This document shows positions 4,635-62,660 of a stretch of DNA of 64,000 nucleotides, in pieces. Each line of letters opens with the position of its first letter. The stretch's first letter is position 1. Position numbers and translations under genes: made by a program. The notes under the pieces are model-generated. The model had not been told where the DNA came from and made no database searches. It saw nothing but the letters and a program-made list of their open reading frames with translations. The DNA is taken from IMG/VR virus record IMGVR_UViG_3300005056_000001, positions 248,001 to 312,000 of that record. One strand, given 5' to 3'.

Positions 4635-5819
4635 ATGCATTTCAGAACTATAGACCCTAAATGGCTAACGCAAAACATCGTGACTATCAACGAAGAGGCA
4701 GACAGCACAGGCGAGATTGACCTACAAATGTATGTTGATGCCTATAGTGAATGGCTTTCGTCCAAGTTTGAGGACATCATTAATGTATACAAAAACGTGG
4801 AGGTAAGCACTGCCATTACAATCAATTTCATTGATGACAAGTTGGTTATCGTGGGTAGCATTCGTGGTATATCGTTTCGTGTCATGGATGAGGTATTGTC
4901 ATTTGCAGAAGACTACGACCTTTCAGGAACATTGGAATTAGGACTAAGCTACACGGCATCCTTTCCTGAAGATTTCTTTAACGAGTACTTTGAGAAGGAC
5001 GACAAAAAAGAAACCGACGAGAATGAAGAACCCGAAGAAGAGACAGACGACGACGATGTTGACGACATAAAGGACGATGATATTGACAATGCATCCGACG
5101 AGGTCAAGGAGATGCGTGAGTCCAAGGATCATATAGACCTTAACAAGGGGCTTGTCACAAAATGGTTTGACCACTTCAACAATTTATTGTTTGGTAACAG
5201 GCTTATTTTACCCCCAATTTCTTTTATGAGGTCTAAGTATGTATTGGCTAGTGTGGTATCAAACAGAAAAGTCAATGAATTGGGTAAATACCCCCCAATT
5301 TCCTTTAAGTTTAGCAGATTCTACAAGTTGGATTTGACAACATTTAAGGGTATTATGGTTCATGAAATGATACACATTGAGTTGTTACAATACGACGGTA
5401 TCGTTTCGGGCAAGGATGGTCACGGCGACGAGTTTGAGTACAGACGTGTCAGACTAAATAAACAAGTAGAGTTCGATGTCCCAAGAACCGAGAATGCAAA
5501 GCTTGAGGTTGACAGCAAGTCGGGCAAGAGATGGGATGTTATCGTTTTTAATCAGGTTGACGGCAGCAAGTCCATGCTTGTATACAAGAGCGGTTATTTG
5601 TCGGACAAGCTCGACGAGGTACAGTCAATTTTTGCATATTGGGTTACACATTACAACAAGAAAGGCGATTTTTCAATTGAGGTTTATAATACGGGTGCCA
5701 CAAACGTGGCCATGTACCGTCAAAAAAGAAATCTTAAAACAACAAATGCCCAAGTCCTAGACAGTACGCTTGCCCAAGAAATCAAAGATGAGGGCAAGTT
5801 GATCTACACCGTAAAATAA
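4635..5819 (+). CDS. SprT-like zinc metalloprotease domain protein with acidic linker
   Basis: FDHFNNLLFGNRL...IMVHEMIH...DGHGDEF is the SprT signature (HExxH plus downstream H). Confidence 0.8.
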   Translation: MHFRTIDPKWLTQNIVTINEEADSTGEIDLQMYVDAYSEWLSSKFEDIINVYKNVEVSTAITINFIDDKLVIVGSIRGISFRVMDEVLSFAEDYDLSGTLELGLSYTASFPEDFFNEYFEKDDKKETDENEEPEEETDDDDVDDIKDDDIDNASDEVKEMRESKDHIDLNKGLVTKWFDHFNNLLFGNRLILPPISFMRSKYVLASVVSNRKVNELGKYPPISFKFSRFYKLDLTTFKGIMVHEMIHIELLQYDGIVSGKDGHGDEFEYRRVRLNKQVEFDVPRTENAKLEVDSKSGKRWDVIVFNQVDGSKSMLVYKSGYLSDKLDEVQSIFAYWVTHYNKKGDFSIEVYNTGATNVAMYRQKRNLKTTNAQVLDSTLAQEIKDEGKLIYTVK

Positions 5820-5842
5820 TATTGGTACATATTTAAAAAGAT

Positions 5843-6679
5843 ATGGCTATTACAACTCCCGAAGAATTTCTTGCCAACAGAACCTTGCCGACAGTAAGAC
5901 CTGTTGATGCCGCATTCATTCAAGACATCATGAATGAACTGAACGAGGAATGTGGTCTTTCTGTAAATATTGACCCAAAAAAAATATTGCGACAAATTCG
6001 CAAGGTTGCCCGATATGTCTATAAGCATTACCAATACATGACTCTCCAACAAAAGGTGGCACTATTAAGATACGAAGACTTCAAGGATAGTTATGCGGCC
6101 AATGGTGGTATGTATGCAACCGTAACGCTCCCAAATTCAATCGAGGGGCTGTGGGGCATAAGTCCTGCAAATAATGGGTCATACGGCACATCTTCTAGGA
6201 TTTTAGACATTCCGTTATTGCGCTCGGTATCACTCACACAGGCAGCAGGCGGTTTTAGTATACAGACCAATGCGGCCAATCAATATAATTATTCTGTGTC
6301 TGATGCCACAATTGCACTCTACGAACAGGCCTCCTATCAGAATCATTTTCAGTCGGGGTTCCCGTTTAGTTTTTCTCATGCAAGCAAGGAGTTGGTAATC
6401 AGGCCCAAGGTAAGACAATCATGTGGTGTCATATTGGGCGTTTATGTTCAGACAGACATATCAAACCTATACAACGATTATTATTTCAGGGAGCATGTGA
6501 TGGGTGAATGCATGATTAGTGCTGCCCGAATTTTTGGAACATTTGACATTGAGTTGGGTGGTGGTGCCACGATTAATTGGAAGGACATAAAAGACGACGG
6601 AAGAGAAAAGGTTGACGAATGCAAAGACCACTATAAAACGACGACATTTATGCCAAAAACATTTTTCAAGGGCAAGTAG
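5843..6679 (+). CDS. neck protein (T4 gp13-like)
   Basis: C-terminal ARIFGTFDIELGGGATINWKDIKDDG matches the gp13 motif (LPGGvtinG..I..eg); GTACATA at 5825-5831. Confidence 0.75.
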   Translation: MAITTPEEFLANRTLPTVRPVDAAFIQDIMNELNEECGLSVNIDPKKILRQIRKVARYVYKHYQYMTLQQKVALLRYEDFKDSYAANGGMYATVTLPNSIEGLWGISPANNGSYGTSSRILDIPLLRSVSLTQAAGGFSIQTNAANQYNYSVSDATIALYEQASYQNHFQSGFPFSFSHASKELVIRPKVRQSCGVILGVYVQTDISNLYNDYYFREHVMGECMISAARIFGTFDIELGGGATINWKDIKDDGREKVDECKDHYKTTTFMPKTFFKGK

Positions 6680-6680
6680 T

Positions 6681-6730
6681 TTTTGCCTAACTCTCGGTTC
6701 TTGGAGTCGATAACCGTGAGTTAGGCAAAA
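6681..6730. terminator. long inverted repeat downstream of the neck gene
   Basis: ttttgcctaactc-tcggtt...aaccgt-gagttaggcaaaa. Confidence 0.55.
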
Positions 6731-6801
6731 ATATGGTAACTAAACAAAAAAATGTTCGATAATTTTTATAATTATCGAACATTTTTTTGTTACATTTGTT
6801 C

Positions 6802-7812
6802 ATGGAATACACAACAGAAGAACACAAACGCCTTGATTTAATATTTAGTGACAACCTAGAATTGGTCAAAGAATTAGAAAAAGGCAACCCGACAGGGGTA
6901 TTTGCCAAGTTGTCTGTCGATTTTATCGACCTTATAAATTTAACAGGCAAGGGTTTTGAGGATGTCTATCTCTTGGATAATGTCGATTCTTTGCTCTATA
7001 ACATGAACCACATACCCGAATGTGTGTTCATGTTACGAAACCTAAAACGGTTGGTGTGGGACGAGAAACACTTAACAGAAATCCCTCAAGGAATTGGAAA
7101 GCTAGTCAATCTCGAGTACCTATCCTTGGCGTTCAACGAAATATCAACACTTCCCGACTGCATGTCCAACCTAAAGAAGTTAACACACCTTGAACTCAAA
7201 GGAAATAAAATTGTAGACTTTCCACGGTCTATTTTTGACATGCCCTCATTGACGTTTCTATCACTTAGCGGGAATGAAATCAAAAACATACCACAGGAAA
7301 TTGGACAATTAACAAGTCTACATACTATTATGATTTACAGTAATAGACTAACATCTCTCCCAAATTCATTGTCTATACTGCCCAACCTTAGAAGCTTGCT
7401 CATTAAACATAACAAGATTAAAAACCTGCCATCAGACTCGCATAACTTGTCGGGTCTTACCTTTCTTTCTTGGGGTGACAATGGACTGACAGAATTCCCG
7501 ACCGAAATCAGGAACCTAACAAACCTAGAAACATTATACCTAGACGATAATAATATAAAAACAGTCCCTGATTGGATAAGCGAACTCACAGAATTAGATA
7601 TGTTTAATTTGTCGGATAACAACATTACACAGCTCCCCGACTCTTTGTGCAAAATGGATTTGTTGGGGTCTTTGTCAGTCACCCGAAACCCTATTACACA
7701 CCTGCCCCAAGCAATCGGAAGTATTAAAAGTCTATATGAGTTATATATTTATTCGACAAACATAACGGTATGTCCACAAATCGACGGTGTGGAGGTTCAT
7801 TTTTTGCAATAA
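6802..7812 (+). CDS. leucine-rich repeat protein
   Basis: About eleven 23-aa repeats LxxLxxLxLxxNxI/LxxLPxxI. Likely start MEYTT at 6802, directly after an inverted repeat (6747-6788) and a TACATTTG box (6791-6798). Confidence 0.95.
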   Translation: MEYTTEEHKRLDLIFSDNLELVKELEKGNPTGVFAKLSVDFIDLINLTGKGFEDVYLLDNVDSLLYNMNHIPECVFMLRNLKRLVWDEKHLTEIPQGIGKLVNLEYLSLAFNEISTLPDCMSNLKKLTHLELKGNKIVDFPRSIFDMPSLTFLSLSGNEIKNIPQEIGQLTSLHTIMIYSNRLTSLPNSLSILPNLRSLLIKHNKIKNLPSDSHNLSGLTFLSWGDNGLTEFPTEIRNLTNLETLYLDDNNIKTVPDWISELTELDMFNLSDNNITQLPDSLCKMDLLGSLSVTRNPITHLPQAIGSIKSLYELYIYSTNITVCPQIDGVEVHFLQ

Positions 7813-24758: not shown

Positions 24759-24816
24759 TATAAGTAAATAGTACATACCGTAACATTATTGATTAAAAAT
24801 AACAATTTCAGATAAG

Positions 24817-26970: not shown

Positions 26971-26977
26971 GTACATA
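26971..26977 (+). promoter_or_regulatory. candidate late promoter GTACATA (representative copy, before major capsid)
   Basis: The same heptamer precedes at least 16 late/virion genes on the coding strand (see findings). Confidence 0.75.
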
Positions 26978-30415: not shown

Positions 30416-33400
30416 TTATTGATGTATAAAATTGACCGTACAATTGCCTGTTGAAATATTGTCTAGTGACAATATTTTGACAACTGTGTCGGTTATTTTT
30501 GTTGTGTCATGTTCGACCCCGTCAACAATAACATTGGACACTCTCATCACATCAATCAATACATTCCGTATTAATGCATTTGTGATAACATCTCTTACCT
30601 CCTCGTCTGTGATATTGTCTGTATTAACATCATAAACACGCAAGGCTGTTACATATTCGTTTGGGTCAAATAAAAAGTTAATAATTCCTTGGTTGTCTAG
30701 TATTTTTCGTGCATAAACAAAAAGAACATCCAATAGATCGAACTGTCCGTCAACAAATGTTGTTCCAACAGAAAGTGTTTCTGTTACATTTATGGACTTC
30801 GACAAGAAACCACGGATCTCGGACGGTGTGTACATCCAACGTACAGGCTCTATATCGGTTTTGTTGAGACTGTACGAGTAATATAAATCTAGGTCTAGGT
30901 CGGATATATTCTTTTCAAGAATTGGTATGGCTTGACCATTTCTGCTATTATTATCAAATAATGGCAATTTTAACGATACCGAGGCTTTTCTAAACCAAAC
31001 AATATCATCATGTTTTATTTCTATCCTTGTGGTCTGCGACGGGATGATTACCGATGTTATCGGGTCGTAATAAAACGATGGTCTGATAGCAAGGAATCTA
31101 TGCACGCTTGACTCTCGGCCAACACCAAAATTTGTAAAGTCGTATGACATTGATTGATTTAACGAAATTTCTTCCTTGAATGCCATGGACATATTTACAC
31201 TTCTTTCGTTTGTGTCGTCATCAACCAAGTGTGTTGTTTTTGCATTCACGGTATTGGCAATATTACTCAGCGATATTAGTTCATATCTGTCAACACTAAG
31301 GTTGTTCGAAATGGTTCTGTCAAAAAATGCATTGTAACGTGCAATACTCTCGGCAGTCGCATATTTATTGTCATTAAACAGGATTGTGTTGTCGGCCACA
31401 TAATCGGGCACAATGTCAAAAACCACAGGAACGGTCAACTCTTTCAGTATGACCTCTATGCCTGTACACCAAAAATAGTCGCTGCCGATTTCTACAATAT
31501 TTTTGAATTCAATCTGAATCCCGAACGTTAGCGTAGAAGAAGGGTTAATGTCTCCATGAAAAATAAGAAAATCATCCCCCAATCCTAACATGGTGGTTAG
31601 GTTAAAGTTATTAACAGCAGGATTTAATTTTATATAGGCAACATCTGTTCCGTTGTCATTGTACACCCAATCTGTTCCGACAGAGGCCCCATTGTAACTT
31701 TTGGGTGTTGTGTTATCAAATAGCAACAATGAAATTGCCTCTTCGCCTAATGATGCCAAGGAGACTTCTGTGGTGTTCCCGCCCGAACTATAATACAACA
31801 CCGATCTATCAAGATGATATTCGCCAACCTCTTCCAATCCTGTTAGAATAGGTTCAGGAATAAATTGTTGTATTACAAATGTCAATGTTTTGAATGGTTT
31901 ATTTTCCAATAATTTGAATTCGATATCTGCACCGCTTGGGGCATTGTCTGATATCAACACAACCGAAAATCTATATCCGTCAAATTCGTCGGGGAATATC
32001 AACCGTATCCCACGGAAAAACACTGATGTAACTTTACTCTTGGGGTCTTTTTTGATTACAGACCACTCATGTATATCGTTTTTATAGACATCGACCCCTG
32101 TGTCCAAAATTATAGCCTCAGATATTGCATTAAGGGTATACCCATCAATCACATCGGTTCCGTACCACGGAGGCGTTCCTGACCCAATTAAATACCAAGA
32201 ATGGCTAAATTGCCCAACATCTCTATTTGGTATAGTAAGGGACGGGGTAAAACTGTCATATCTGAACGTCATAGAAGTATTAAACTTCTGTGGAGAATTT
32301 GTGACATCGAAACCATCTCGTATAGAAAGCTTGGACACCCATTCATACATAGAATTTTGTAAGAGTGAAATATCATTAAATTCTTGGAGCGGTTTATATT
32401 CGCTATCCGTTGTCGTGAAGGCAAAGTTGTTTTTATTTATGGTATCAACAAGCATCTCTGTGGAAGGAATGTCGATATTATTAAAAAAACTGTTTACGAT
32501 AACCAAGAGTTCTGCCTTATAGTCCGCAAGCTCCTGTGGGGTTGCCGAAAAATCCAATCTACCAAAAAATGTTGGGTCTGCTATTTTGTTTAGTAAATAA
32601 CTCCTGTATGTGTTCAGATCAAAGTCTAGCGGGTCTGAGTGATAGCTTATATCACGATTATAGTCGAACTTTCGATGTTCAATATTTTGCACAGCATAAT
32701 AGACAATAGGCTTTTCTACCAATAGTTTTATGTCCAACAACGGTTTGTCTGTGACATCAATATCCATTCGGTATGCAAATGTTGACACGTGTCTAAAACC
32801 CAACAACGGAACTGCCACCGAGCCATCAGAGAATCTGACGGCATCAATATCCGTTGTGATGTTTTTGGAGGCAAGTGTTAGTGTTTTTTTGTTTGTACCA
32901 AAAAGGTTTGGTATAGCACCCGTAAACGAACCAATAAAAGGCTCCAATACGGCACATGCAAATGGAACACTTGTGATTGTCACCGTTTCCAACACAACAG
33001 ACGAAATAGTTGTTATAACGTGCAGTTCATCCGAACCGAACCTACGAAAGTTTAACACAAGATTTGTTGACGTTGTCTGCAATTGGGCTGTCATCTCCTT
33101 GATAAGCAAATCAATTGTCTTAGTCACCGTGTCACCTTGTAATTCGGGTGTCATCAAAACAGACGCCTCTATATTACCATCAAACTCGAACGTGAATGCC
33201 TGATTAATGTTTGGAATCGTGTTGAACTTGATAATTGCCATGGGCGGTTTTGAAACGCCCACACTAGCCCCTTTTATCATTCCTGTTGCCTTGTACAATG
33301 GCTCTGTTAATACAATAGGAATGTCTGTTTGGACATATTCTGTTGTTAGGGCAATATTTATATCATTAAGCGGGTCTAGTTCTGTGTCAAGTATTTCATT

Positions 33401-34264
33401 GTTTTTAACATAGATCCCCACAAATTCCACAAATGTATCGTTGTTTTCTATTTTTGTGTTATCAAGACTAAATGTAAATTCCAAATTCAAAAACCTTGGG
33501 TCAATCATGTTGGCGACCTCGTATGATTTTGTCAAAAAAACCTCGGACTCTTCAATGGTTCTTTCGGAAAGTAGGTCTCCGTTTATATAAACATCACTTT
33601 CGGTGATAACACCCGAATTTATATCCATTCCAATCACAGAAACAGTATCTGTATAGTTCACACTTATACCGACTTCTTGTTCTGTAATTTCTTGGTAATG
33701 ATCGTCCAAAAACTTGCCAATTCTTGTTTCACGTGTTAGGTCATAATACTTGACCATCTCGGTATTTTCATTGGTAAGTATATTGATCCCGCTCCTTTGT
33801 ATGTTGCTGTTTAAAACAGGGTTATTGTTCCTTGACACCTTAAAGATGGCAAACCCATCAGGCACACCATCATCGCCCAAAAATAGTGGCGCAAAAAAGC
33901 GATGTGTAGAATCCACACGCTTGTCTGTGTCGCTATATGCCCCATACCTGTATAGAGTGGAGGGTTGTGACGTAAACTTTTCGACCACCTCAAAGTCTTG
34001 GTCGGGTAGTCCATAGATTGCCGACTTGTTATCGACCAAATCACAAAATCTTTTTAGATTAGACCGAAACGGTTTGTCTGTGTCGATTCTATATCCTTTT
34101 AGTTTCGAGTCTTCCATGTCCTCATTTGCACCAATACTCTCAAGATAGCACAATGTGTCATCAACCAATATTTTGATATTTCCCGAAAATTTCGGATTCG
34201 CTGCACTTATTGAGAATGTGTTCTTAAGAAGCTTTGGGTTTAATGATTCTTCCTTGAAAGTCAT
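30416..34264 (-). CDS. large virion structural protein (probably baseplate)
   Basis: 1282 aa, beta-rich, N/T/D-rich; GTACATA at 34318-34324. Confidence 0.55.
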   Translation of the reverse strand: MTFKEESLNPKLLKNTFSISAANPKFSGNIKILVDDTLCYLESIGANEDMEDSKLKGYRIDTDKPFRSNLKRFCDLVDNKSAIYGLPDQDFEVVEKFTSQPSTLYRYGAYSDTDKRVDSTHRFFAPLFLGDDGVPDGFAIFKVSRNNNPVLNSNIQRSGINILTNENTEMVKYYDLTRETRIGKFLDDHYQEITEQEVGISVNYTDTVSVIGMDINSGVITESDVYINGDLLSERTIEESEVFLTKSYEVANMIDPRFLNLEFTFSLDNTKIENNDTFVEFVGIYVKNNEILDTELDPLNDINIALTTEYVQTDIPIVLTEPLYKATGMIKGASVGVSKPPMAIIKFNTIPNINQAFTFEFDGNIEASVLMTPELQGDTVTKTIDLLIKEMTAQLQTTSTNLVLNFRRFGSDELHVITTISSVVLETVTITSVPFACAVLEPFIGSFTGAIPNLFGTNKKTLTLASKNITTDIDAVRFSDGSVAVPLLGFRHVSTFAYRMDIDVTDKPLLDIKLLVEKPIVYYAVQNIEHRKFDYNRDISYHSDPLDFDLNTYRSYLLNKIADPTFFGRLDFSATPQELADYKAELLVIVNSFFNNIDIPSTEMLVDTINKNNFAFTTTDSEYKPLQEFNDISLLQNSMYEWVSKLSIRDGFDVTNSPQKFNTSMTFRYDSFTPSLTIPNRDVGQFSHSWYLIGSGTPPWYGTDVIDGYTLNAISEAIILDTGVDVYKNDIHEWSVIKKDPKSKVTSVFFRGIRLIFPDEFDGYRFSVVLISDNAPSGADIEFKLLENKPFKTLTFVIQQFIPEPILTGLEEVGEYHLDRSVLYYSSGGNTTEVSLASLGEEAISLLLFDNTTPKSYNGASVGTDWVYNDNGTDVAYIKLNPAVNNFNLTTMLGLGDDFLIFHGDINPSSTLTFGIQIEFKNIVEIGSDYFWCTGIEVILKELTVPVVFDIVPDYVADNTILFNDNKYATAESIARYNAFFDRTISNNLSVDRYELISLSNIANTVNAKTTHLVDDDTNERSVNMSMAFKEEISLNQSMSYDFTNFGVGRESSVHRFLAIRPSFYYDPITSVIIPSQTTRIEIKHDDIVWFRKASVSLKLPLFDNNSRNGQAIPILEKNISDLDLDLYYSYSLNKTDIEPVRWMYTPSEIRGFLSKSINVTETLSVGTTFVDGQFDLLDVLFVYARKILDNQGIINFLFDPNEYVTALRVYDVNTDNITDEEVRDVITNALIRNVLIDVMRVSNVIVDGVEHDTTKITDTVVKILSLDNISTGNCTVNFIHQ

Positions 34265-48551: not shown

Positions 48552-48625
48552 AATAGATGTATTGTAGGGGTTATTTAAAATATTGCCCGAACATATGTTC
48601 GGGCTTTAAGGTATGTACTATTTGA

Positions 48626-51577: not shown

Positions 51578-51636
51578 GATTTATATTGTTTATAGGTTTT
51601 TAAAATATTATGTTATATGTACTATTCAAAATATGA

Positions 51637-53535: not shown

Positions 53536-53711
53536 TTTCGCATTGTTTTATGATAATATATCGCAGCAACCATTTGTGGTCGCACATTGATACATTAGGG
53601 TTATATATTTTTTGATATATGTACAAAACATTTTACTTATTTGCACGTTCGGATATTTTTACCTAACTTGGCACAACAGAACATACATTACAATAACAGA
53701 TACAGGATAAT

Positions 53712-53988: not shown

Positions 53989-54327
53989 ATGAAAAGAACA
54001 ATTGTAACATTATGTGGCTCCACAAAATTTGAAAAGGAGTTTCACGAAGTAAACAAACAATTAACAGCAAGAGGACATATTGTAATTTCTTGTGGTATAT
54101 TTGGACACACAATGCCACCCAAAGAAAAGGAATTGTTTTTCTCTACAACAGTAAAGGCAAAGTTGGATTGTCTCCATAACGACAAGATCCTGATGTCGGA
54201 TTGTATTCTAGTTATTGATGTTAAGGGCTACATAGGGTCAAGCACAAAAAAAGAAATCGACTTTGCCAAGAAGCATAAAAAGGGTGTGTATTATTACTCA
54301 AAAGATGTTATTGATTCTATTGGTTGA
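53989..54327 (+). CDS. nucleoside 2-deoxyribosyltransferase-like (NDT/DUF4406-type Rossmann) protein
   Basis: TLCGSTKF..GHIV..HNDKILMSDCILVIDVKGYIGSSTKKEIDFA. Confidence 0.7.
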   Translation: MKRTIVTLCGSTKFEKEFHEVNKQLTARGHIVISCGIFGHTMPPKEKELFFSTTVKAKLDCLHNDKILMSDCILVIDVKGYIGSSTKKEIDFAKKHKKGVYYYSKDVIDSIG

Positions 54328-54341
54328 TTGTCCAAACAGAT

Positions 54342-54378
54342 AAAAAAAGCGTTTTACTTTGGTAGAACGCTTTTTTTT
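54342..54378 (+). terminator. intrinsic terminator
   Basis: aaaaaaagcgttttac-tttg-gtagaacgctttttttt. Confidence 0.8.
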
Positions 54379-54404
54379 GTACATATCAAAAAACCCAATA
54401 GTTA

Positions 54405-57400
54405 ATGAGCACACTTAATGACCAAATAGCCCAATTACAATTGTTGATGAATAATGCGTTGGCAATTCTTACGGCATTTAACGAGACAAATTTTTCGGAT
54501 GTTGCATTCGCAGAAATTGCCATTGATAATGGTGACGGAACAAACACAGTATTTAACCTGCCTTCCAATATCAATAACGACAGAAAAATTAAGGCACTTC
54601 AAAACACCGTGGATGCTCTTACATCACTGTCGGATAGTGGACAAACGTTAACCGTTTCGATTGCCGACCCCAATGTTAGAATATTGTATATTGGCTCATT
54701 TGAGCGTGCGTTTTCTGAATTGTTATCAACAGATTATGTGGTTAGTACAACACTATCAATCAAACAGAATCATTTGTTGGAGGCATTAACGGATCCAATT
54801 TGTAGAGTGCAAGTAACACTACCGCCACAATTTTCGCATATACAACATGTCAGACTGTCTAAGTTTGTTATTACAGGATCGGACAAGAACGACAAATTTG
54901 ACACACTCAATGTCACAACCACAAGCACAAGAAGTGCCGTATTACAGGCATTAAACGACACGGCTACCACCTATAAGGAGTTTGACTCTGTGTTTACTTT
55001 GGATGCCCAAAAGGTAAGGTTCTATGGGGCATTCTCTGTGTTAAATATAGCCAACGAAACAAATGGTGATTTTACTTGTCGATTGGACAAGAATACATAC
55101 AACGACTCTATTAGTACGGTCATCAACAGCAAACAATTGACAGTCGGGGATGTTTTGGTAACAGCCAACGGTGATTCTATTTGGGACGTTATCAACATAA
55201 CACTAATTAATGGTGTGTTTGTGACCCTACGCAAAAAAGGCGGGTTCAAGGCAATAACGTCAGGTATACAAACGCTTAGATTTCATGACCAAAATGATAT
55301 CACAAAAACTGTATCAATACCTATCGAGGGTGGCGAACGTTCCTTTGCTTTTTTTGCCCCAATCAAACCCGACACGGGAATTGCAGGCGAATGGAGTCAA
55401 AATATACCAATCTCAAGTGCGAACTACTCGGTTGATGTAAGTGGCATAACAGTACCATTTGACGAATACTACAACACAAATGTTCTGCCTATTGGACAAT
55501 TCATCCTGAGTCAAGTTTCCGATCAATCGGTATCACGTGCCGTGGCATTGGATATAGCAAAACCAACACTAAAAACAGAAAATTTTAGTGTGGTTCAAAT
55601 CAATGCCCATCTATCAAGAACAGGCGAATTTGAAAAAATAAAAAGACTGCAAGAAGTCAAAAACAATACATCAACAAAATTAGCATCATTGTCCAACGAA
55701 ATTTCTGAAATACGGAATCGCTTGGCACGTTCGACATATAGAAGTTCGACTGCCAAAATTCAGGACGAAACTATACTAGGGTCGAAGGAGTCAGCACGAA
55801 ATCTGCAATCAAAAAAACTCCAAACAACCATTAAGGAAATTTCTAGTGTTAGCTCAACAACATCCGCAAACAAGGTTCAGCCAATATACCATGTGCGTGG
55901 ATTTTTTAAAATTGACGAGCCCGTATCAAATGATGGGCAAACACAACGACTCGTGTCTTATGAAGTGCGGTATAAATATGTACCCTCAAATTCAAGAGCC
56001 TCAATTTCACAATCATTGAGTAGCATTGACGGTGTTGACGGCACGAAATCTCCATGGTTTGATGCGCCCCCAATAGTTTTGGAAAAAGAATTCAATTCTG
56101 ATACCGAAAAATATGAATGGGAACAAAATGACATAGCCAATGCCCAAAAAAACAATATAAACCAAGTGGATATTCCATTAACATACGGCGAGGCTGTTAT
56201 CATACAGGTCAGGGCAGTGAGTGAGGCAGGATACCCGTCCAACCCTGCAAAGTCGTTATTTTCGGATGATTTAAGAATCGAGTTTCCGACATCGTTGGCA
56301 CAAAACGAAACCATTAGTGCAATAGTTTCACAAAATGCAGAGGATGAACAGATAGTGAAACTTGACGAGTTTTTAAGAGACAAGGGGTATGATAAATTAA
56401 CTGCCGAAAGTTACGAAACAACCGAGCAATATTTTGTTACAAAGGCGAACACCATTGATTCCACGTTCAAGAATGATGCAGGGCTTGTTCAAAACCTAAG
56501 AGATTTTTTAACAACATTGGTAAACAGAGTCGGAACACTTGAAGAAACTGTGCTGCGACAAAGCGTGTCTTGGTCTATTGAGATTATTGACTCGAACGGT
56601 AAATCTTATCCTATCGGGAACAGGAGCAGTCTTAAGCTTTTTGCAGGATATTACACCGAAAGTGTTGATGTTACAGATGTCGCAAACTACGGAGATTTTA
56701 TTCAGGAACAATTCCTGTTAAAAATCACCAACAACAGTGCAAGCGCAGGCGATATATTGACACTGTCGGCAGGTGACATAACGGCACGAACAACCGACAT
56801 TAACTATACAACCGCACCTTTTCAGGCGGTTACAACACCTTTGCAATTCCAAAAGAACGGTCAAATATTCTACCTAAGAACCAATTCGTTAAGTGGTGCC
56901 GACACGTTCTACACCAACGACACAACGATTTCAACAAATACGGTGACACCTTCTGACATTGACACAGGTGCACTTACGGCACAAAAAAATGTTGTTTCAT
57001 GGGACGGAGTTGCCGCATCCTTAATTAAATTATTGGACGGGGCAACATCGCCTAGTTATGTTGCACTTCTGAAGACACATCCGATATATGCCGCTTATTT
57101 GACCAATCCATCACCCGCAAACTTGGCTCTATTGGCCGATGAATTTGCACGTATTACAAATTACACACAAATATTGAGAGACGGATTTAAACAGCGTGAT
57201 TATGATTCGCTTGTCAATCCACAATTTTTGTCTGATGATAAATATTTGGTTGGTGGAAATTCGTGTGGATCCATGTTGTTTACAAGACCACAACAACAAG
57301 ACAGCGTTCAGGTATCAACGGCAGATGCCTCTTCGCCAAGAACGGTTGAGGGTGGCAAGTCGATTCAGATACCAATCATCTTTCAATACAGAATGACGGA

Positions 57401-57617
57401 TGGTATTGGCCGACTGAACGGTGACGGCAGCAAGTCGTTGGCAGCATCAAATCTGACCTACAAAAAAAGAATCGGATTTGACATCTACCTAGGATCACAA
57501 ATACAATTTGATATCGAGGTCGAAGCCTCTTTCAGACCAACCCTACAATCGAGCCGCCGATCCGTTGACAACACACCCATTATAACAACCACAAATGGTG
57601 ATGCAACCACGTTGTAA
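54405..57617 (+). CDS. large virion structural protein (baseplate/tail)
   Basis: 1070 aa, T/S/N-rich, FN3-like IQVRAVSEAGYPSNP; GTACATA at 54379-54385. Confidence 0.6.
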   Translation: MSTLNDQIAQLQLLMNNALAILTAFNETNFSDVAFAEIAIDNGDGTNTVFNLPSNINNDRKIKALQNTVDALTSLSDSGQTLTVSIADPNVRILYIGSFERAFSELLSTDYVVSTTLSIKQNHLLEALTDPICRVQVTLPPQFSHIQHVRLSKFVITGSDKNDKFDTLNVTTTSTRSAVLQALNDTATTYKEFDSVFTLDAQKVRFYGAFSVLNIANETNGDFTCRLDKNTYNDSISTVINSKQLTVGDVLVTANGDSIWDVINITLINGVFVTLRKKGGFKAITSGIQTLRFHDQNDITKTVSIPIEGGERSFAFFAPIKPDTGIAGEWSQNIPISSANYSVDVSGITVPFDEYYNTNVLPIGQFILSQVSDQSVSRAVALDIAKPTLKTENFSVVQINAHLSRTGEFEKIKRLQEVKNNTSTKLASLSNEISEIRNRLARSTYRSSTAKIQDETILGSKESARNLQSKKLQTTIKEISSVSSTTSANKVQPIYHVRGFFKIDEPVSNDGQTQRLVSYEVRYKYVPSNSRASISQSLSSIDGVDGTKSPWFDAPPIVLEKEFNSDTEKYEWEQNDIANAQKNNINQVDIPLTYGEAVIIQVRAVSEAGYPSNPAKSLFSDDLRIEFPTSLAQNETISAIVSQNAEDEQIVKLDEFLRDKGYDKLTAESYETTEQYFVTKANTIDSTFKNDAGLVQNLRDFLTTLVNRVGTLEETVLRQSVSWSIEIIDSNGKSYPIGNRSSLKLFAGYYTESVDVTDVANYGDFIQEQFLLKITNNSASAGDILTLSAGDITARTTDINYTTAPFQAVTTPLQFQKNGQIFYLRTNSLSGADTFYTNDTTISTNTVTPSDIDTGALTAQKNVVSWDGVAASLIKLLDGATSPSYVALLKTHPIYAAYLTNPSPANLALLADEFARITNYTQILRDGFKQRDYDSLVNPQFLSDDKYLVGGNSCGSMLFTRPQQQDSVQVSTADASSPRTVEGGKSIQIPIIFQYRMTDGIGRLNGDGSKSLAASNLTYKKRIGFDIYLGSQIQFDIEVEASFRPTLQSSRRSVDNTPIITTTNGDATTL

Positions 57618-57907: not shown

Positions 57908-57940
57908 TAATTTAGACACGATAGAAGTGTACAAGACAAA

Positions 57941-57971
57941 TAGAAATGGCTCCCAATTGGGAGCCATTTCT
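57941..57971. terminator. bidirectional hairpin/terminator
   Basis: tagaaatggctccc-aatt-gggagccatttcta, a perfect palindrome. Confidence 0.75.
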
Positions 57972-58515
57972 ATTGTGGTTCGTCGGTCGTGTCCGAAACT
58001 ATTCCTCCTTGAAAGTAACTCAAGACCTTTCTGTCGATATATTGGGTTATAATGTCCTCGAATTTTTGTATCAATCCTATCCTAGGCAACAACACATGAA
58101 GAGTAACAGCCAATACCGCCAATGCAATTGGTGCAATCATGATTACCGAAATTTGTTTATCCAATAAGAGAAATGATGGTACAACCGAAATGAATGTTGC
58201 AATAAACTGTGTCAGACTTCTAGAGCTTACAATAGAAGCAATCGTAACAAACATGGCAGCCATAAAAACACCGTGGACATGGAAATTGCCAAAGTTGTTT
58301 GGGTAAACCCATTGTCCTAGATGGATAGACACGTTCATAGACAAAACAAGTACGGCAATGGTGCTTGCCAAAACCATGTTCAATCGGGTCTTTGCCTCGC
58401 TTGGCATTTTGTGTTTTGTTTCTCGGATTTTTTGGAGTGTTCTGAGCCCAAATGAGCCAAATGTAATCATTGTCAAATAAATAATAAATACTATAATTGT
58501 AATTGTTTGATGCAT
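57970..58515 (-). CDS. multi-pass membrane protein
   Basis: About five hydrophobic segments. Confidence 0.7.
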   Translation of the reverse strand: MHQTITIIVFIIYLTMITFGSFGLRTLQKIRETKHKMPSEAKTRLNMVLASTIAVLVLSMNVSIHLGQWVYPNNFGNFHVHGVFMAAMFVTIASIVSSRSLTQFIATFISVVPSFLLLDKQISVIMIAPIALAVLAVTLHVLLPRIGLIQKFEDIITQYIDRKVLSYFQGGIVSDTTDEPQ

Positions 58516-58543: not shown

Positions 58544-59419
58544 TTAGTCGTATTTTATCTTCCTTGGTTTTCTACACCATGTGTTCGGGACGTTTATGTA
58601 TCTAATTTTAGGAAGCTCCTCGATCCATTCGGGTAATTCCATTCTTTCGTTTCCGCCTAGCCATAGACATTCAAGGTTGTTTAGATTTTTCATTGACTCA
58701 GGAAGGTGTGTGATATCATTACCCGACAAGTATAGAAACTTAAGAGATTCTAGCTCACCAATACTTTCGGGTAACTCGTTTAAATTATTGTTTTGGAAAT
58801 TCAAGTCTGTAATATTTTTAAGATCACCGATGTGTTTTGGCATTGTTTCTATGAGACCATCACGAACATTCAATACACTCAACATTTTCAGGTCACATAG
58901 CGAGTCGGGCAATTCGGTCAATTTATTTCCGATTAAACCAAGATATGACAAGTGTTTAAGGTTCCCAATATCTTTTGGTATCGAGGACACATCACACCTT
59001 ATCAAATCTAAACCTCTAAGGTTTTGTAAACTACACAACCAATCAGGCAAGTCTCCAAGCACACAATCACAGGTGACAAAAGTTCGTAGACTTTTAAGAT
59101 TCTTCATGCTATCAGGAAGATGTGTGATATTGCAGTATTCTAATTTAATCTTTTCTAAATGTGTCAGTAGTCCGATATTTTCGGGAATTGTATATTTATG
59201 CATAAAGCCTCTTGTTAGGGTTTTCGTACTGCCCAACTTTCTTAATAAGTCCAATAAAGGGAAATTTATACTTAACGGATTAAAAGAAATGTACAGCTCA
59301 TAATACCCGCTAAAATCCATCACAATATTATTGGACTCAACCAATTGCAATGCAAGTTCAATATTGTTGCTGTCCCATGTGTGAATGAGGTCTAGTATTT
59401 TTTGTTCGTCTGTTGTCAT
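58544..59419 (-). CDS. leucine-rich repeat protein
   Basis: About nine 23-aa LRRs (..LPESIGELESLKFLYLSGN..); start MTTDEQ at 59419 forms an ATGA overlap with the upstream gene. Confidence 0.95.
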   Translation of the reverse strand: MTTDEQKILDLIHTWDSNNIELALQLVESNNIVMDFSGYYELYISFNPLSINFPLLDLLRKLGSTKTLTRGFMHKYTIPENIGLLTHLEKIKLEYCNITHLPDSMKNLKSLRTFVTCDCVLGDLPDWLCSLQNLRGLDLIRCDVSSIPKDIGNLKHLSYLGLIGNKLTELPDSLCDLKMLSVLNVRDGLIETMPKHIGDLKNITDLNFQNNNLNELPESIGELESLKFLYLSGNDITHLPESMKNLNNLECLWLGGNERMELPEWIEELPKIRYINVPNTWCRKPRKIKYD

Positions 59420-61703: not shown

Positions 61704-61776
61704 TTTACTAATGATTGCCTTACAAATATAGACAAAAATCCGTGCCCACAAGCATGGACACGGATTTTAACATTTC
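61704..61776 (-). repeat. 73-bp exact duplicated promoter cassette, copy 1
   Basis: Identical to 62588-62660; contains a hairpin and TATATTTG on the minus strand. Confidence 0.9.
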
Positions 61777-61790
61777 TTTAACGTTTTTAA

Positions 61791-62573
61791 CTAAATTTTC
61801 ATTTTGGAGTTGTTCTTTAAAATACTACTGAGCTCTGTTTTTGAATCCTTCAAAAGCTTTTTGTGTGCCTTAACACTGTCGGTTGCCCATTTAATATGTT
61901 TTTTATAGGAGTTAACACAATCCTTGATGCACTCTTTTTGATATTTCTTGTAACCCTCAATATCATTTTTGTATAATTTGTAATTGTGACAAGATTTGTC
62001 AATACTCTCAAAATCATCCAATAACCAAGAAACATTTTTATGTTCCAATATTTGTGTGACAGTCTTTATGTTTTTCTTGGTGGCTAGGTACTCAAGGTTT
62101 CTGTTAATCGAAGATTTGGCCAATGTAATCACATCGTTCAATTTTTTTGTGCGGTTATTTTGGCGTTTAACGGCCTTTGACAGTGCTTCGTACTTGTCTG
62201 TCACATCTTGTCTGTTTGTTTGAGGAAGGGTGGTTTGTGTGGTGTAGCGTGTATGAAACCGTTGCTTGTTCCATCCACCCGCATAAATAACATCAGTAGT
62301 CAATGTATACTCTCTTTCGTCACGTATGATAATGGCATTAATTGTAACATTCCCACAATCAAGATTTGCCGTGAACGATTTTAGTTTGTCTGTTGGAAGT
62401 GTGTATTTATTTATTGATGTTGCCATCTTATAAACCATGTCCAACCTAAGACATTGTTTGTCGTACTTGCTTAATGCCTTGCCATTCTTTTGGATGTTGT
62501 GGTCATTAACCTTTTTGATAATGGTATTGATCCAAGAGTTTGACTTTTCGATAATTGTTTCCAAGATATGCAT
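61791..62573 (-). CDS. conserved phage hypothetical protein (AGG.N.QR.H.RY motif)
   Basis: TTDVIYAGGWNKQRFHTRY plus a coiled-coil. Confidence 0.7.
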   Translation of the reverse strand: MHILETIIEKSNSWINTIIKKVNDHNIQKNGKALSKYDKQCLRLDMVYKMATSINKYTLPTDKLKSFTANLDCGNVTINAIIIRDEREYTLTTDVIYAGGWNKQRFHTRYTTQTTLPQTNRQDVTDKYEALSKAVKRQNNRTKKLNDVITLAKSSINRNLEYLATKKNIKTVTQILEHKNVSWLLDDFESIDKSCHNYKLYKNDIEGYKKYQKECIKDCVNSYKKHIKWATDSVKAHKKLLKDSKTELSSILKNNSKMKI

Positions 62574-62587
62574 AATGACTATTTTTG

Positions 62588-62660
62588 TTTACTAATGATT
62601 GCCTTACAAATATAGACAAAAATCCGTGCCCACAAGCATGGACACGGATTTTAACATTTC
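62588..62660 (-). repeat. 73-bp exact duplicated promoter cassette, copy 2
   Basis: Identical to 61704-61776. Confidence 0.9.

What the first reader, a model, noticed from the sequence alone, without database searches (positions are those of the whole stretch)
6802..7812. Two phage-encoded LRR proteins sharing an N-terminal cap
Seen: two long 23-aa-period LRR solenoids 51 kb apart on opposite strands with related N-termini (YTTEEHKRLDLIFSDNLELVKEL vs MTTDEQKILDLIHTWDSNNIELALQL). Known: such LRRs are typical of eukaryotic immune receptors and of some LRR-rich bacteria, and are uncommon in tailed phages. Neither has a signal peptide or a late GTACATA box; the first has a host-type TACATTTG box. 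Inference: early cytoplasmic binders of host proteins, e.g. decoys for bacterial NLR/LRR immune sensors, or effectors relevant to a eukaryote-associated host.
Basis: partly seen in the sequence, partly recalled or inferred. Interest (0 to 1): 0.62.

Follow-up and report, generated by a model that had tools for sequence, protein, structure and literature searches.

The report
Jumbo phage leucine-rich repeat gene family
The two leucine-rich-repeat (LRR) genes are real and belong to a family of about 27 such genes, 6% of a 368-kb marine jumbo phage genome; this is rare in phages and most likely gives the phage a set of soluble protein binders used inside the infected cell.

Summary
Both ORFs are real. 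LRR-A is window 6802-7812 (+), 336 aa. LRR-B is window 58544-59419 (-), 291 aa. Both match Pfam LRR models strongly, have a 23-residue period and fold confidently (pLDDT 90 and 94) into an N-terminal helical cap followed by 10-11 repeats. Their N-termini are related beyond chance, although LRR-A's cap is a divergent copy.

The window lies in a complete 368,109-bp jumbo myophage. Its nearest cultured relatives by terminase are Tenacibaculum phages. The genome holds 27 LRR genes (two frameshifted) and one cap-only ORF, together 6.2% of the genome and by far its largest paralog family. A sister phage fragment also carries the family.

The 50-aa cap has no Pfam model. Only 99 of 1.84 billion representative proteins match it. 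In genomes it turned up only in a few Bacteroidota (Aureispira and other Saprospiraceae, Microscillaceae, Cytophagaceae), which points to the host lineage.

No paralog has a signal peptide, a membrane segment or a catalytic domain. The most variable repeat positions lie on the concave face. LRR-A and LRR-B sit in units with a Bacteroidota-type TAnnTTTG box, not the late GTACATA box. Other paralogs follow late structural genes.

Best reading: intracellular protein binders. The targets are unknown, and the decoy and eukaryote-effector ideas are untested.

The parts
6802..7812 (+). LRR-A coding sequence (336 aa plus stop)
   Evidence: ORF listing and sequence. Pfam LRR_14 3.6e-38 and LRR_8 2.3e-37. 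AlphaFold2 model with pLDDT 90.4.
6802..6981 (+). LRR-A N-terminal helical cap (residues 1-60), a divergent copy of the family cap
   Evidence: Helices at residues 5-14, 19-28, 33-40, 42-48 and 52-56. Pairwise score against the LRR-B cap is 54, reached by 0 of 5000 shuffles. Leave-one-out profile score is only 2.7 bits.
7036..7761 (+). LRR-A solenoid, about 11 repeats of 23 residues (LxxLxLxxNxIxxLPxxIGxLxN)
   Evidence: Pfam stretches from residue 79. Eleven strands from residues 83-85 to 313-316. Repeat statistics.
6745..6789 (.). AT-rich palindromic hairpin with T-runs on both strands, terminator-like, between the late adaptor-like gene and LRR-A
   Evidence: sequence.
6782..6798 (+). T-run plus TACATTTG box (6791-6798), a match to TAnnTTTG that ends 3 nt before the ATG
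   Evidence: The same arrangement lies 26-100 nt before about 17 other genes of the genome.
5825..5831 (+). Late-type GTACATA box of the upstream gene 5843-6679 (weak head-tail adaptor match). Context only, not part of LRR-A.
58544..59419 (-). LRR-B coding sequence (291 aa plus stop)
   Evidence: Pfam LRR_14 6e-32. AlphaFold2 model with pLDDT 94.4.
59225..59419 (-). LRR-B N-terminal four-helix cap (residues 1-65), a canonical family cap (..QKILDLIxTxDxxNIELALQL..)
   Evidence: Helices at residues 4-12, 17-29, 37-46 and 55-63, with pLDDT 90-98. Leave-one-out profile score 43.6 bits against 6.3 for the best shuffle. Alignment A1.
58589..59224 (-). LRR-B solenoid, about 10 repeats
   Evidence: Ten strands from residues 67-71 to 274-276. 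VIA-align Z 28-29 to SHOC2 and Leptospira LIC11098 over residues 42-290.
61723..61768 (-). Early-type element (hairpin 61735-61768, then TTTTTG-TC-TATATTTG ending at 61723, followed by TAAGGCAATCA). It heads the minus-strand unit that contains LRR-B.
62607..62652 (-). Second, near-identical copy of the early-type element, before gene 61791-62573
57939..57974 (-). GC-rich terminator-like hairpin that closes the unit after the membrane-protein gene 57970-58515, which follows LRR-B

Best explanation
LRR-A and LRR-B belong to a lineage-specific multigene family in a 368-kb jumbo myophage of marine Bacteroidota. The family has 27 LRR genes and one cap-only ORF, together 6.2% of the genome.

Each product is a small (about 190-375 aa) soluble protein with two parts. 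The first is a helical N-terminal cap of about 50 residues that closes the end of the solenoid. The second is 4-13 leucine-rich repeats. There is no catalytic, membrane or export module.

I propose that they work as protein-binding modules in the cytoplasm of the infected cell. The conserved leucines, the asparagine ladder and the 'LPxxIGxL' convex side build an invariant scaffold. The solvent-exposed residues of the concave strand (repeat positions 3, 5 and 7) differ from paralog to paralog, so each protein would grip a different target. Targets would be host proteins, or proteins of rival mobile elements, and the effect would be to sequester, block or re-scaffold them.

The two window genes lie in units driven by a host-type (Bacteroidota TAnnTTTG) promoter-like element, so they would act from early in infection, in host takeover or counter-defence. 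The family is shared with a few Saprospiraceae, Microscillaceae and Cytophagaceae genomes. It was therefore exchanged with the probable host lineage and then amplified and diversified in the phage lineage.

Shown here: the fold, family membership, copy number, lack of export signals, motif context, position-specific variability, presence in a sister phage and the narrow bacterial distribution.

Inferred: expression timing, cytoplasmic action, that the concave face is the binding site, and every statement about targets.
For: Fold and family:
- Pfam LRR matches.
- AlphaFold2 models with pLDDT 90.4 and 94.4.
- Best solved matches are LRR-only scaffolds and binders: Leptospira LIC11098/10831/12759, SHOC2, RSU1 and SDS22, with Z 23-29.

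Family size:
- 31 six-frame matches in the phage's own genome.
- 25 ORFs by phmmer plus 5 more by profile.
- It is the largest paralog cluster, with 28 ORFs; the next clusters have 5 and 4.
- The family covers 22,974 nt, 6.2% of the genome.

Old and retained:
- Paralogs are at most 62% identical.
- GC is 0.32-0.42 against 0.381 for the genome.
- 25 of the 27 genes are intact.
- The sister phage G001 (terminase 70% identical) has at least 9 LRR ORFs with the same cap.

Soluble, and nothing but a binder:
- Maximum Kyte-Doolittle hydropathy is 1.55 over 19 residues, and there is no N-terminal hydrophobic region.
- Pfam finds only LRR families.

Diversified face:
- Entropy is highest at repeat positions 3, 5 and 7 (3.8-3.9 bits in the 23-aa subfamily; 3.7, 3.0 and 3.3 bits in the 22-aa subfamily).
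- Scaffold positions stay at or below 2.3 bits.

Timing:
- The late motif GTACATA occurs 24 times in the window against 8.6 expected. It precedes the genes for protease, a 635-aa protein (phrog_28442, function unknown), sheath, terminase and tail protein, but no LRR gene directly.
- The early-type hairpin plus TAnnTTTG element sits at LRR-A, at the head of the LRR-B unit, and 37 nt before the paralog at G000 74517-75314.

Host link:
- The cap profile finds 99 of 1.84e9 proteins.
- 44 of the 47 hits of at least 200 aa carry LRRs behind the cap.
- The genome hits are Aureispira, Saprospiraceae, Microscillaceae and Cytophagaceae, with the cap at residue 1 and no signal peptide.
Against: - There are no expression data. 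No RNA run holds this DNA.
- The TAnnTTTG box of LRR-A ends 3 nt before the ATG, whereas the other copies lie 26-100 nt upstream. Either the mRNA is leaderless or the box is not LRR-A's promoter.
- LRR-A directly follows a late-motif gene with a weak head-tail-adaptor match.
- Two paralogs (G000 213865-214569 and 212904-213845) lie 2 and 19 nt behind a late-motif baseplate-wedge-like gene.
- The sister phage has an LRR gene inside its tail module. At least part of the family may therefore be late or virion-associated.
- High variability at the concave positions is generic to LRR proteins and does not prove diversifying selection. dN/dS could not be computed because divergence is too deep.
- No target is known, and no defence or anti-defence homology was found.
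Confidence: 0.45

Rival explanations
1. Virion-associated adhesion or receptor-binding modules. The shared N-terminal module would dock many different LRR 'heads' onto the baseplate, tail or head as a branched multi-receptor-binding set or a fibre cloud. The paralogs would widen host range or mediate adherence.
For: - A shared N-terminal module with a variable C-terminal binding domain is the classic layout of phage receptor-binding paralogs.
- Two paralogs lie 2 and 19 nt behind a late-motif baseplate-wedge-like gene (phrog_219, 6e-18).
- LRR-A follows a late adaptor-like gene.
- G001 has an LRR gene between homologues of tail-module genes.
- Relatives PTm1/PTm5 and PAU have head fibres and mop-like tail fibres (PMC7824862).
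- In phage Goslar, proteins with an N-terminal DUF7941 module followed by LRR or beta-helix domains are proposed to form a virion fibre cloud (bioRxiv 10.64898/2026.04.21.720040).
Against: - No LRR gene has the late GTACATA box directly upstream.
- About 18 paralogs lie in arrays among small non-structural ORFs with no late motif.
- The same cap plus LRR architecture occurs in bacterial chromosomes in ordinary contexts: a 252-kb contig, contigs over 1 Mb, and next to T9SS and Omp85 genes. The cap is therefore an LRR end-cap, not a virion docking domain.
- The cultured relatives with fibres (pT24, PTm1, PAU) have no LRR match.
- Both models are single solenoids with no trimerisation or fibre-like part.
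Confidence: 0.2
2. Mimics or competitors of the host's own cap-LRR proteins or of LRR-bearing immune sensors. The phage copies would titrate ligands or partners away from host proteins. This is the first reader's 'decoy' idea and a special case of the intracellular-binder model.
For: The family is shared with the putative host lineage, where it is itself multi-copy: 8-31 profile matches per genome at per-genome E<=1e-3, and 1-7 at E<=1e-6. One metagenomic cap-LRR gene lies beside Dnd-like, SNF2 and SMC-like genes.
Against: - No NTPase, TIR, nuclease or other immune effector domain is linked to the cap family in the hits examined.
- The bacterial cap-LRR proteins have no known function.
- The single defence-island neighbourhood is anecdotal, and that contig also carries phage-lysis genes.
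Confidence: 0.1
3. A neutral or selfish expansion. Tandem duplication of a repeat gene would be tolerated because jumbo genomes have slack, with no specific function per copy.
For: The genes lie in tandem arrays (99-102, 108-110 and 114-118 kb). Two members are frameshifted, one by a 1-nt deletion and one by a 7-nt deletion. Gene positions turn over between G000 and G001.
Against: 25 of the 27 genes are intact despite at most 62% identity between paralogs, so the duplications are old. The family is retained in a sister phage whose core proteins are only 50-70% identical. The scaffold positions of the repeats are strongly conserved.
Confidence: 0.08
4. Effectors aimed at a eukaryote that associates with the host bacterium, comparable to the ankyrin proteins of sponge-associated phages. 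I recall those from memory and did not check them here.
For: The repeat type resembles eukaryotic SHOC2, LRRC40 and RSU1. The best viral structure matches are from viruses of eukaryotes.
Against: There is no signal peptide, T9SS domain or other export signal in any paralog. Identity to eukaryotic LRRs is generic (25-35%). The DNA was seen only as small shares in seawater and subsurface metagenomes. The cap is confined to free-living marine Bacteroidota lineages.
Confidence: 0.04

Closest known systems
Unnamed cap-LRR proteins of Aureispira (e.g. WP_052597083.1), other Saprospiraceae, Microscillaceae and Cytophagaceae
   Same: They have the same N-terminal cap motif (..KIxxLLxTGDxxNIELAxQL..) starting at residue 1, followed by 23-residue LRRs. 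They have no signal peptide, occur in several copies per genome and are sometimes tandem.
   Different: They are chromosomal and 249-818 aa long, and their density is far lower: a few to about 30 per 6-11 Mb, against 27 in 0.37 Mb. Their function is unknown as well.
Leptospira LRR proteins LIC11098, LIC10831, LIC12759 (PDB 4u08, 4u06, 4u09)
   Same: These are the best solved-structure matches (Foldseek E 2e-18 to 6e-17; VIA Z 25-29). They are LRR-only proteins of similar size with 23-residue repeats.
   Different: The alignments cover model residues 42-290 only, not the first cap helices. From general knowledge, the Leptospira proteins are exported or surface proteins of a pathogen. The phage proteins have no export signal.
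SHOC2, RSU1 and SDS22 (eukaryotic cytosolic LRR scaffolds)
   Same: They are cytosolic LRR-only proteins that work purely by holding partners on the solenoid. VIA Z is 24-29 at 20-28% identity.
   Different: They are eukaryotic, single-copy and have different N-terminal regions. There is no evidence of shared partners.
LRR, ankyrin and F-box multigene families of giant eukaryotic viruses (Klosneuvirus, Catovirus, Hokovirus, Bodo saltans virus and others)
   Same: A large viral genome devotes many paralogs to a repeat-protein binder. They give the top BFVD structural matches (E down to 2.5e-19), and a Bodo saltans virus LRR protein appears among the sequence hits.
   Different: They are viruses of eukaryotes. 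Some copies are fused to F-box domains that plug into host ubiquitination. No such partner domain is present here.
Goslar (Chimalliviridae) DUF7941-LRR/beta-helix virion proteins
   Same: A jumbo phage with a shared N-terminal module followed by variable domains, some of them LRR-like.
   Different: The N-terminal module is a different one, said to be exclusive to chimalliviruses. It was found by virion mass spectrometry and is fused to carbohydrate-binding and hydrolase domains.
LRR-E3 ligase effectors (IpaH/SspH NEL family; XopL, PDB 4fcg)
   Same: The LRR acts as a target-recognition module of an effector. The XopL LRR gives Z 24.3.
   Different: There is no NEL, XL-box or any other catalytic domain, and no secretion signal.
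Uncultured huge phage LR756500.1 (462 kb)
   Same: It is another very large phage with many LRR matches, 22 places.
   Different: Its LRR ORF has another N-terminus, and the record gives only one marginal match to the cap profile (E 0.005), in a 1530-aa reading frame elsewhere in the record. It looks like an independent expansion.

Membership tests
Leucine-rich repeat superfamily (Pfam LRR_8, LRR_14, LRR_4) | Tandem 20-30-residue repeats with LxxLxLxxN/CxL that score above the curated Pfam cut-offs | tested here: met
   LRR-A scores 131.7 bits on LRR_14 (cut-off 40) and 127 bits on LRR_8 (cut-off 27). LRR-B scores 111.2 and 64.1 bits. The period is 23 in 93 of 106 intervals.
Leucine-rich repeat superfamily (Pfam LRR_8, LRR_14, LRR_4) | Curved solenoid fold with a parallel beta-sheet on the concave side | tested here: met
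   The AlphaFold2 models have pLDDT 90.4 and 94.4, with 11 and 10 regularly spaced strands. Foldseek and VIA matches to solved LRRs reach Z 29. These are predicted structures, not solved ones.
Cap-LRR family (unnamed; this phage lineage plus a few Bacteroidota) | N-terminal helical cap of about 50 aa with the KIxxLLxTGDxxNIELAxQLxxS motif, starting at the first residues | tested here: met
   LRR-B scores 43.6 bits in a leave-one-out profile, against 6.3 for the best shuffle. Its four helices have pLDDT 90-98.
Cap-LRR family (unnamed; this phage lineage plus a few Bacteroidota) | The same cap in LRR-A | tested here: inconclusive
   The leave-one-out profile gives only 2.7 bits, which is not significant. 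However, the pairwise score against the LRR-B cap is 54, reached by 0 of 5000 shuffles, and the helix layout is similar. It is a divergent member with a 3-residue deletion.
Bacterial NLR/STAND (Avs-like) immune sensors | A central STAND NTPase domain plus an effector domain attached to the repeat sensor | tested here: not met
   Pfam finds only LRR families. The proteins are 291-336 aa, fully taken up by cap and repeats.
LRR-NEL and other LRR-E3 effectors (IpaH/SspH/XopL) | A C-terminal E3 ligase domain and type III secretion | tested here: not met
   There is no domain beyond the LRRs. Only about 15-20 residues follow the last repeat.
Internalins and other exported bacterial LRR surface proteins (including T9SS cargo of Bacteroidota) | An N-terminal signal peptide and an anchoring or secretion domain (LPXTG, IR domain, or the Por_Secre_tail C-terminal domain) | tested here: not met
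   There is no hydrophobic N-terminal region (maximum 12-residue hydropathy 1.69) and no membrane segment. There is no PF18962 or other such domain.
Phage receptor-binding proteins or tail fibres | Late expression with the structural genes and presence in the virion | tested here: inconclusive
   No late GTACATA box lies directly before any LRR gene. However, some paralogs are placed to be co-transcribed with late structural genes. Presence in the virion cannot be tested with these tools.
Known anti-defence proteins | Homology to, or a demonstrated block of, a defence system | not tested
   No anti-defence library was available, and I did not scan the proteins against PADLOC. PHROGs gives only phrog_6688 and phrog_21719, both of unknown function.

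The most novel reading that the evidence does not exclude
The jumbo phage maintains a diversified 'recognition repertoire' of about 27 LRR solenoids on one invariant scaffold with variable concave faces. This would be the phage counterpart of the repeat-protein arsenals of giant viruses. Its members would each neutralise or hijack a different host defence or regulatory protein, or a rival mobile element, and the family would have been traded with the LRR-rich host lineage (Aureispira-like Saprospiraceae or Microscillaceae). If so, LRR-based recognition would be used by a virus of bacteria as a weapon in an arms race, and the cap would define a new, unannotated domain family.
Probability: 0.25. 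Interest if true: 0.8.

Novelty: new variant of a known kind. Interest (0 to 1): 0.6.

Why it matters
LRR proteins are standard recognition modules of eukaryotic immunity and of some bacterial surface and effector proteins, but they are almost absent from phages. Only 6 of 50,697 phage records hold a match to LRR-B. A broad comparative survey of 224 jumbo phages does not mention them at all.

A complete jumbo phage that spends 6% of its genome on one diversified LRR family shows that phages too can build large repeat-protein arsenals, as giant viruses do. That gives a concrete set of 27 proteins for testing what such arsenals bind.

The narrowly distributed cap also gives a testable host prediction for an uncultured jumbo phage: Aureispira-like Saprospiraceae or Microscillaceae/Cytophagales. 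It also defines a domain family that has no database model.

Tried and rejected
- **Close phage relatives by DNA:** megablast of 25 kb against INPHARED found nothing.
- **Close orthologues of LRR-A and LRR-B in IMG/VR:** none were found. Population-level or orthologue dN/dS on the concave positions was therefore impossible. Paralogs are at most 62% identical, so synonymous sites are saturated.
- **Word-index search with the cap of a canonical paralog:** no hit. The full cap alignment was too variable for a pattern scan. The stricter pattern NIELA[LF]QL found no other viral contig.
- **Nearest bacterial donor for the whole protein:** only generic LRR matches at 25-41% identity from bacteria, archaea, animals and plants, with no donor signal.
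- **Pfam and Atlas look-ups of the cap:** there is no Pfam family. Atlas feature scores were at most 0.80 and structure rows showed generic small helical bundles. These are leads only, and I rejected them.
- **RNA evidence:** no RNA run holds the stretch. DNA appeared only as small shares (0.08-0.16) in subsurface and seawater metagenomes.
- **Sigma-70-type promoters:** not enriched (7 against 5.9 expected, and 27 against 21.5).
- **The cap as a capsid-targeting or virion-docking signal:** I considered and set this aside, because the cap occurs on ordinary chromosomal bacterial proteins and no LRR gene has its own late box.
- **Complex prediction:** not run, because no specific pair is claimed to bind.
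- **Neighbours of LRR genes:** a 581/711-aa paralog pair and a four-member family have no Pfam or PHROG match.

Full report
**What is at the coordinates**

The ORF at 6802-7812 (+) begins ATG GAA TAC ACA (MEYTTEEHKRL...) and ends with TAA at 7810-7812. I call it LRR-A; it is 336 aa long. A TTG at 6787 would add five residues, but it lies inside the upstream T-run. Homology with the other paralogs supports the ATG instead.

The partner ORF lies at 58544-59419 (-), with ATG MTTDEQKILDLI.... I call it LRR-B; it is 291 aa long.

Both match the Pfam LRR models far above the curated cut-offs. LRR-A scores 131.7 bits on LRR_14 and 127 bits on LRR_8. LRR-B scores 111.2 and 64.1 bits. BLASTP between the two gives 31% identity at E 1e-28, starting at residue 4 of A and residue 2 of B.

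**Are the N-termini really related?**

Taken alone, the first 30-60 residues of the two proteins align with a score of 54. Shuffles give a mean of 18-23 and a maximum of 46, and 0 of 5000 reach 54.

There is a nuance. Against a profile of the other paralogs' N-termini, LRR-B scores 43.6 bits (best of 1000 shuffles 6.3). LRR-A scores only 2.7 bits (best shuffle 11.5). LRR-B carries the canonical cap. LRR-A carries a divergent copy with a three-residue deletion in the turn between the first two helices.

**Structure**

The AlphaFold2 models are confident.
- LRR-A: pLDDT 90.4, helices between residues 5 and 56, then 11 regularly spaced strands.
- LRR-B: pLDDT 94.4, four helices at residues 4-63 with pLDDT 90-98, then 10 strands.

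The best solved matches are LRR-only binders and scaffolds. These are Leptospira LIC11098, LIC10831 and LIC12759, SHOC2, RSU1, SDS22, internalin A and the Chlorobium Roco LRR, with Foldseek E down to 2e-18 and VIA Z 23-29. Most of these alignments, including the low-rmsd ones, begin after about residue 40 of the model. The first cap helices have no counterpart among them.

**The genome**

The window is bases 248001-312000 of a 368,109-bp virus record. The record has direct terminal repeats and is rated 100% complete. The window encodes DNA polymerase, portal, prohead protease, tail sheath, a tail protein and the large terminase.

The closest cultured phages by terminase are Tenacibaculum phage pT24 (46% identity), PTm1 and PTm5 (37%) and Sphingomonas phage PAU (31%). 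An IMG/VR fragment of 137 kb, G001, has a terminase 70% identical. No tRNA gene lies in the window.

**The two genes are the tip of a family**

Several counts agree.
- A six-frame search of the phage's own genome with LRR-A gives 31 matches.
- phmmer finds 25 ORFs, and a family profile adds 5 more.

After merging two frameshifted pairs, there are 27 LRR genes and one ORF that has the cap but no repeats (G000 120934-121380). Together they cover 22,974 nt, 6.2% of the genome. This is by far the largest paralog family, with 28 ORFs in one cluster; the next clusters have 5 and 4.

There are two subfamilies.
- One has 23-residue repeats (LxxLxLxxNxIxxLPxxIGxLxN). It includes LRR-A and LRR-B.
- The other has very regular 22-residue repeats (LxLxxNqLTtPPxLeGLvN). 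Its members lie in arrays at 65-71, 99-102 and 108-110 kb.

Twenty-two ORFs share the cap, with consensus ..KIxxLLxTGDxxNIELAxxLxxxN.. (alignment A1). Two paralogs (73659-74498 and 74517-75314) carry a different N-terminal domain of about 95 residues.

Two members are broken, one by a 1-nt deletion and one by a 7-nt deletion. Paralogs are at most 62% identical. Their GC content (0.32-0.42) brackets the genome's 0.381. The family is therefore old, not a recent acquisition.

**Other phages**

The sister phage G001 carries at least nine LRR ORFs, several with the same cap. They sit at different positions from those in G000. Their best matches to G000 LRRs are 28-35% identical, while core proteins are 50-70% identical.

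In the INPHARED collection only 6 of 50,697 records match LRR-B. They are one 462-kb uncultured phage (22 places), two Leptospira phages and three Listeria phage records. The Tenacibaculum relatives have no match. The LRR ORF I read in the 462-kb phage has another N-terminus, and the cap profile gives only one marginal match elsewhere in that record (E 0.005).

The 50 best matches among predicted viral structures are all from giant eukaryotic viruses or an entomopoxvirus. A comparative survey of 224 jumbo phages contains neither 'LRR' nor 'leucine-rich' (PMC7824862). My literature searches found no description of such a phage family.

**The cap and the host lineage**

The whole protein finds only generic LRR relatives at 25-41% identity, drawn from bacteria, archaea, animals and plants. 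The cap has no Pfam model.

A profile of the 22 caps, scored against 1.84 billion representative proteins, finds only 99 proteins at E<=1e-3. In nearly all of them the cap starts within the first 40 residues. Several of the top hits are the phage's own proteins. Of the 47 hits of at least 200 aa, 44 carry LRRs behind the cap.

Named or placed hits are all Bacteroidota of a few lineages: Aureispira (WP_052597083.1), other Saprospiraceae, Microscillaceae, Cytophagaceae and 'Marine bacterium AO1-C'. In these genomes the cap sits at or next to the first residue of proteins of 249-818 aa. Six of the seven ORFs read carry 23-residue LRRs and the seventh a few LRR-like units and TPR-like repeats; none has a signal peptide.

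Those genomes hold 8-31 profile matches each at a per-genome E<=1e-3. Some lie on contigs of 0.25 to over 1 Mb and some are in tandem.

The distribution is very patchy. At E<=1e-6 the counts of genomes with a match were:
- 0 of 200 sampled genomes of the phylum;
- 0 of 60 genomes of the order of the Aureispira genome;
- 1 of 40 genomes of its family;
- 1 of 60 genomes of the order of the Microscillaceae genome.

One 9.9-kb metagenomic contig made of small same-strand ORFs carries four tandem LRR genes and looks like another phage of this kind.

The direction of transfer, phage to bacterium or the reverse, cannot be decided from a 55-residue domain. Either way the cap ties this phage lineage to Aureispira-like Saprospiraceae or to Microscillaceae/Cytophagales as probable hosts. 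The Bacteroidota-type promoter boxes agree with that.

**Expression signals**

GTACATA is a real upstream motif. It occurs 24 times in the window against 8.6 expected, and 0 of 100 shuffles reach 24. Genome-wide there are 59 sites within 120 nt upstream of genes, mostly 20-60 nt from the start. These include the genes for protease, a 635-aa protein (phrog_28442, function unknown), sheath, terminase, a tail protein and two very large proteins. It behaves as a late promoter box. No LRR gene has it within 100 nt upstream.

A second recurrent element consists of a hairpin, a TTTTTG run, 1-3 nt and TAnnTTTG, often continued by TAAGGCAATCA. TAnnTTTG is the -7 box I know for Bacteroidota promoters; that is my own knowledge and was not tested here. 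The element precedes about 17 mostly small genes at 26-100 nt.
- LRR-A has the hairpin (6745-6789, terminator-like on both strands), the T-run and TACATTTG (6791-6798). The box ends 3 nt before the ATG, so the mRNA would have to be leaderless. This is unresolved.
- LRR-B lies in a minus-strand unit that starts at such an element (61723-61768). The unit runs through three small ORFs, a 169-aa ORF and a 209-aa ORF, then LRR-B, then a 181-aa hydrophobic, probable membrane protein (my reading of its sequence). It ends at a GC-rich hairpin at 57974-57939.
- The paralog at G000 74517-75314 has the element 37 nt upstream.

The family is not uniformly of this type. G000 213865-214569 and 212904-213845 lie 2 and 19 nt behind a late-motif gene with a baseplate-wedge match (phrog_219, 6e-18). 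Three more paralogs lie downstream of late-motif genes. About 18 have neither motif. The gene before LRR-A has a late box and a weak head-tail-adaptor match (1.7e-7). No RNA run was available to settle the timing.

**How it most likely works**

Every paralog is a soluble protein made only of cap and repeats. Within the repeats the scaffold positions are conserved, with entropy at or below 2.3 bits. The most variable positions are 3, 5 and 7 of the repeat, which are the exposed residues of the concave strand. Their entropy is 3.8-3.9 bits in the 23-residue subfamily. In the 22-residue subfamily they are again the most variable and are rich in aromatic and charged residues.

That is the pattern of a family of binders with different specificities, although it is also the generic LRR pattern. 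Taken with the early-type units of the two window genes, the retention of the family in a sister phage and its fast turnover, the best-supported model has the proteins binding different host or rival-element proteins in the cytoplasm during infection. I give this 0.45.

The main rival is a virion-associated adhesin set, at 0.2. Gene positions next to structural genes support it. The chromosomal bacterial homologues, the missing late boxes and the non-structural arrays weaken it.

The decoy idea is an untested special case. The eukaryote-effector idea is disfavoured by the lack of any export signal.

**Verdict**

The domain is a known kind. A 27-gene LRR family with its own unannotated cap in a bacteriophage is a new variant, with no description in the literature searched.

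Noticed in passing
window 5825-5831, 24771-24777, 26971-26977, 48612-48618(-), 51616-51622(-), 53618-53624(-), 54379-54385 and others: GTACATA, usually in the form T/A/G-GTACATA-T/C/A, lies 20-60 nt upstream of structural genes. It occurs 24 times in the window against 8.6 expected, and there are 59 gene-proximal sites in the genome. It is probably the late promoter box of this phage lineage.
   Followed up: partly
window 61723-61768(-), 62607-62652(-); G000 2663, 31221, 33230, 131411, 247309, 353063, 354010: A repeated element of about 60 nt occurs at least 10 times before small genes. It consists of a GC-rich hairpin (..AAAATCCGTGTCC..GGCACGGATTTT), then TGTC-TATATTTG-TAAGGCAATCA. It looks like a combined terminator and Bacteroidota-type promoter cassette for early genes.
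   Followed up: partly
window 6686-6725: A second hairpin lies just after the stop of gene 5843-6679. It has a 9-bp GC-containing stem (GCCTAACTC...GAGTTAGGC) and a 22-nt loop. It is preceded by TTTTT and followed by AAAAA, so it is not a canonical terminator on either strand.
   Followed up: no
G000 100296-101050 and 109484-110526: Two members of the 22-residue LRR subfamily are each split into two overlapping ORFs. One has a 1-nt deletion in a C-run and the other a 7-nt deletion between AAT repeats. These are either pseudogenes or assembly errors.
   Followed up: partly
G000 120934-121380: This ORF has the family cap (MSLKDLINTGNHNNIILAFTLAKSN..) followed by about 100 residues with no LRR and no Pfam match. 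It is the only cap-only member in the phage.
   Followed up: partly
G000 54253-56388 and 71904-73649; G000 75651-79076: A pair of large paralogous proteins (711 and 581 aa) each lie immediately downstream of an LRR gene. A four-member paralog family lies upstream of the LRR pair at 73.6-75.3 kb. None of these has a Pfam or PHROG match.
   Followed up: partly
window 4635-5819: A 394-aa ORF has an acidic middle region and an HExxH motif. It gives a sub-threshold SprT-like match (E 1.9e-4, 21.7 bits against a cut-off of 25.6), so it may be a metalloprotease.
   Followed up: partly
L031 (Logan contig SRR29021620_14227) 10001-11062: A metagenomic cap-LRR gene (P0131) lies between an SNF2 helicase / SMC-like / Dnd-associated gene block and genes for a HIT protein, Amidase_2 and GH108. 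The context is either a defence island or a prophage.
   Followed up: no
LR756500.1 (462-kb uncultured phage), e.g. L041 2944-3702: Another huge phage has 22 LRR-matching places, but its LRR ORF has a different N-terminus. LRR expansions in very large phages seem to have arisen more than once.
   Followed up: partly
window 54405-57617 and 30416-34264(-): Two very large late-motif proteins (1070 and 1282 aa) match only PHROGs of unknown function (phrog_29329 and phrog_31887). They are 60-67% identical in the sister phage and are probably structural.
   Followed up: no
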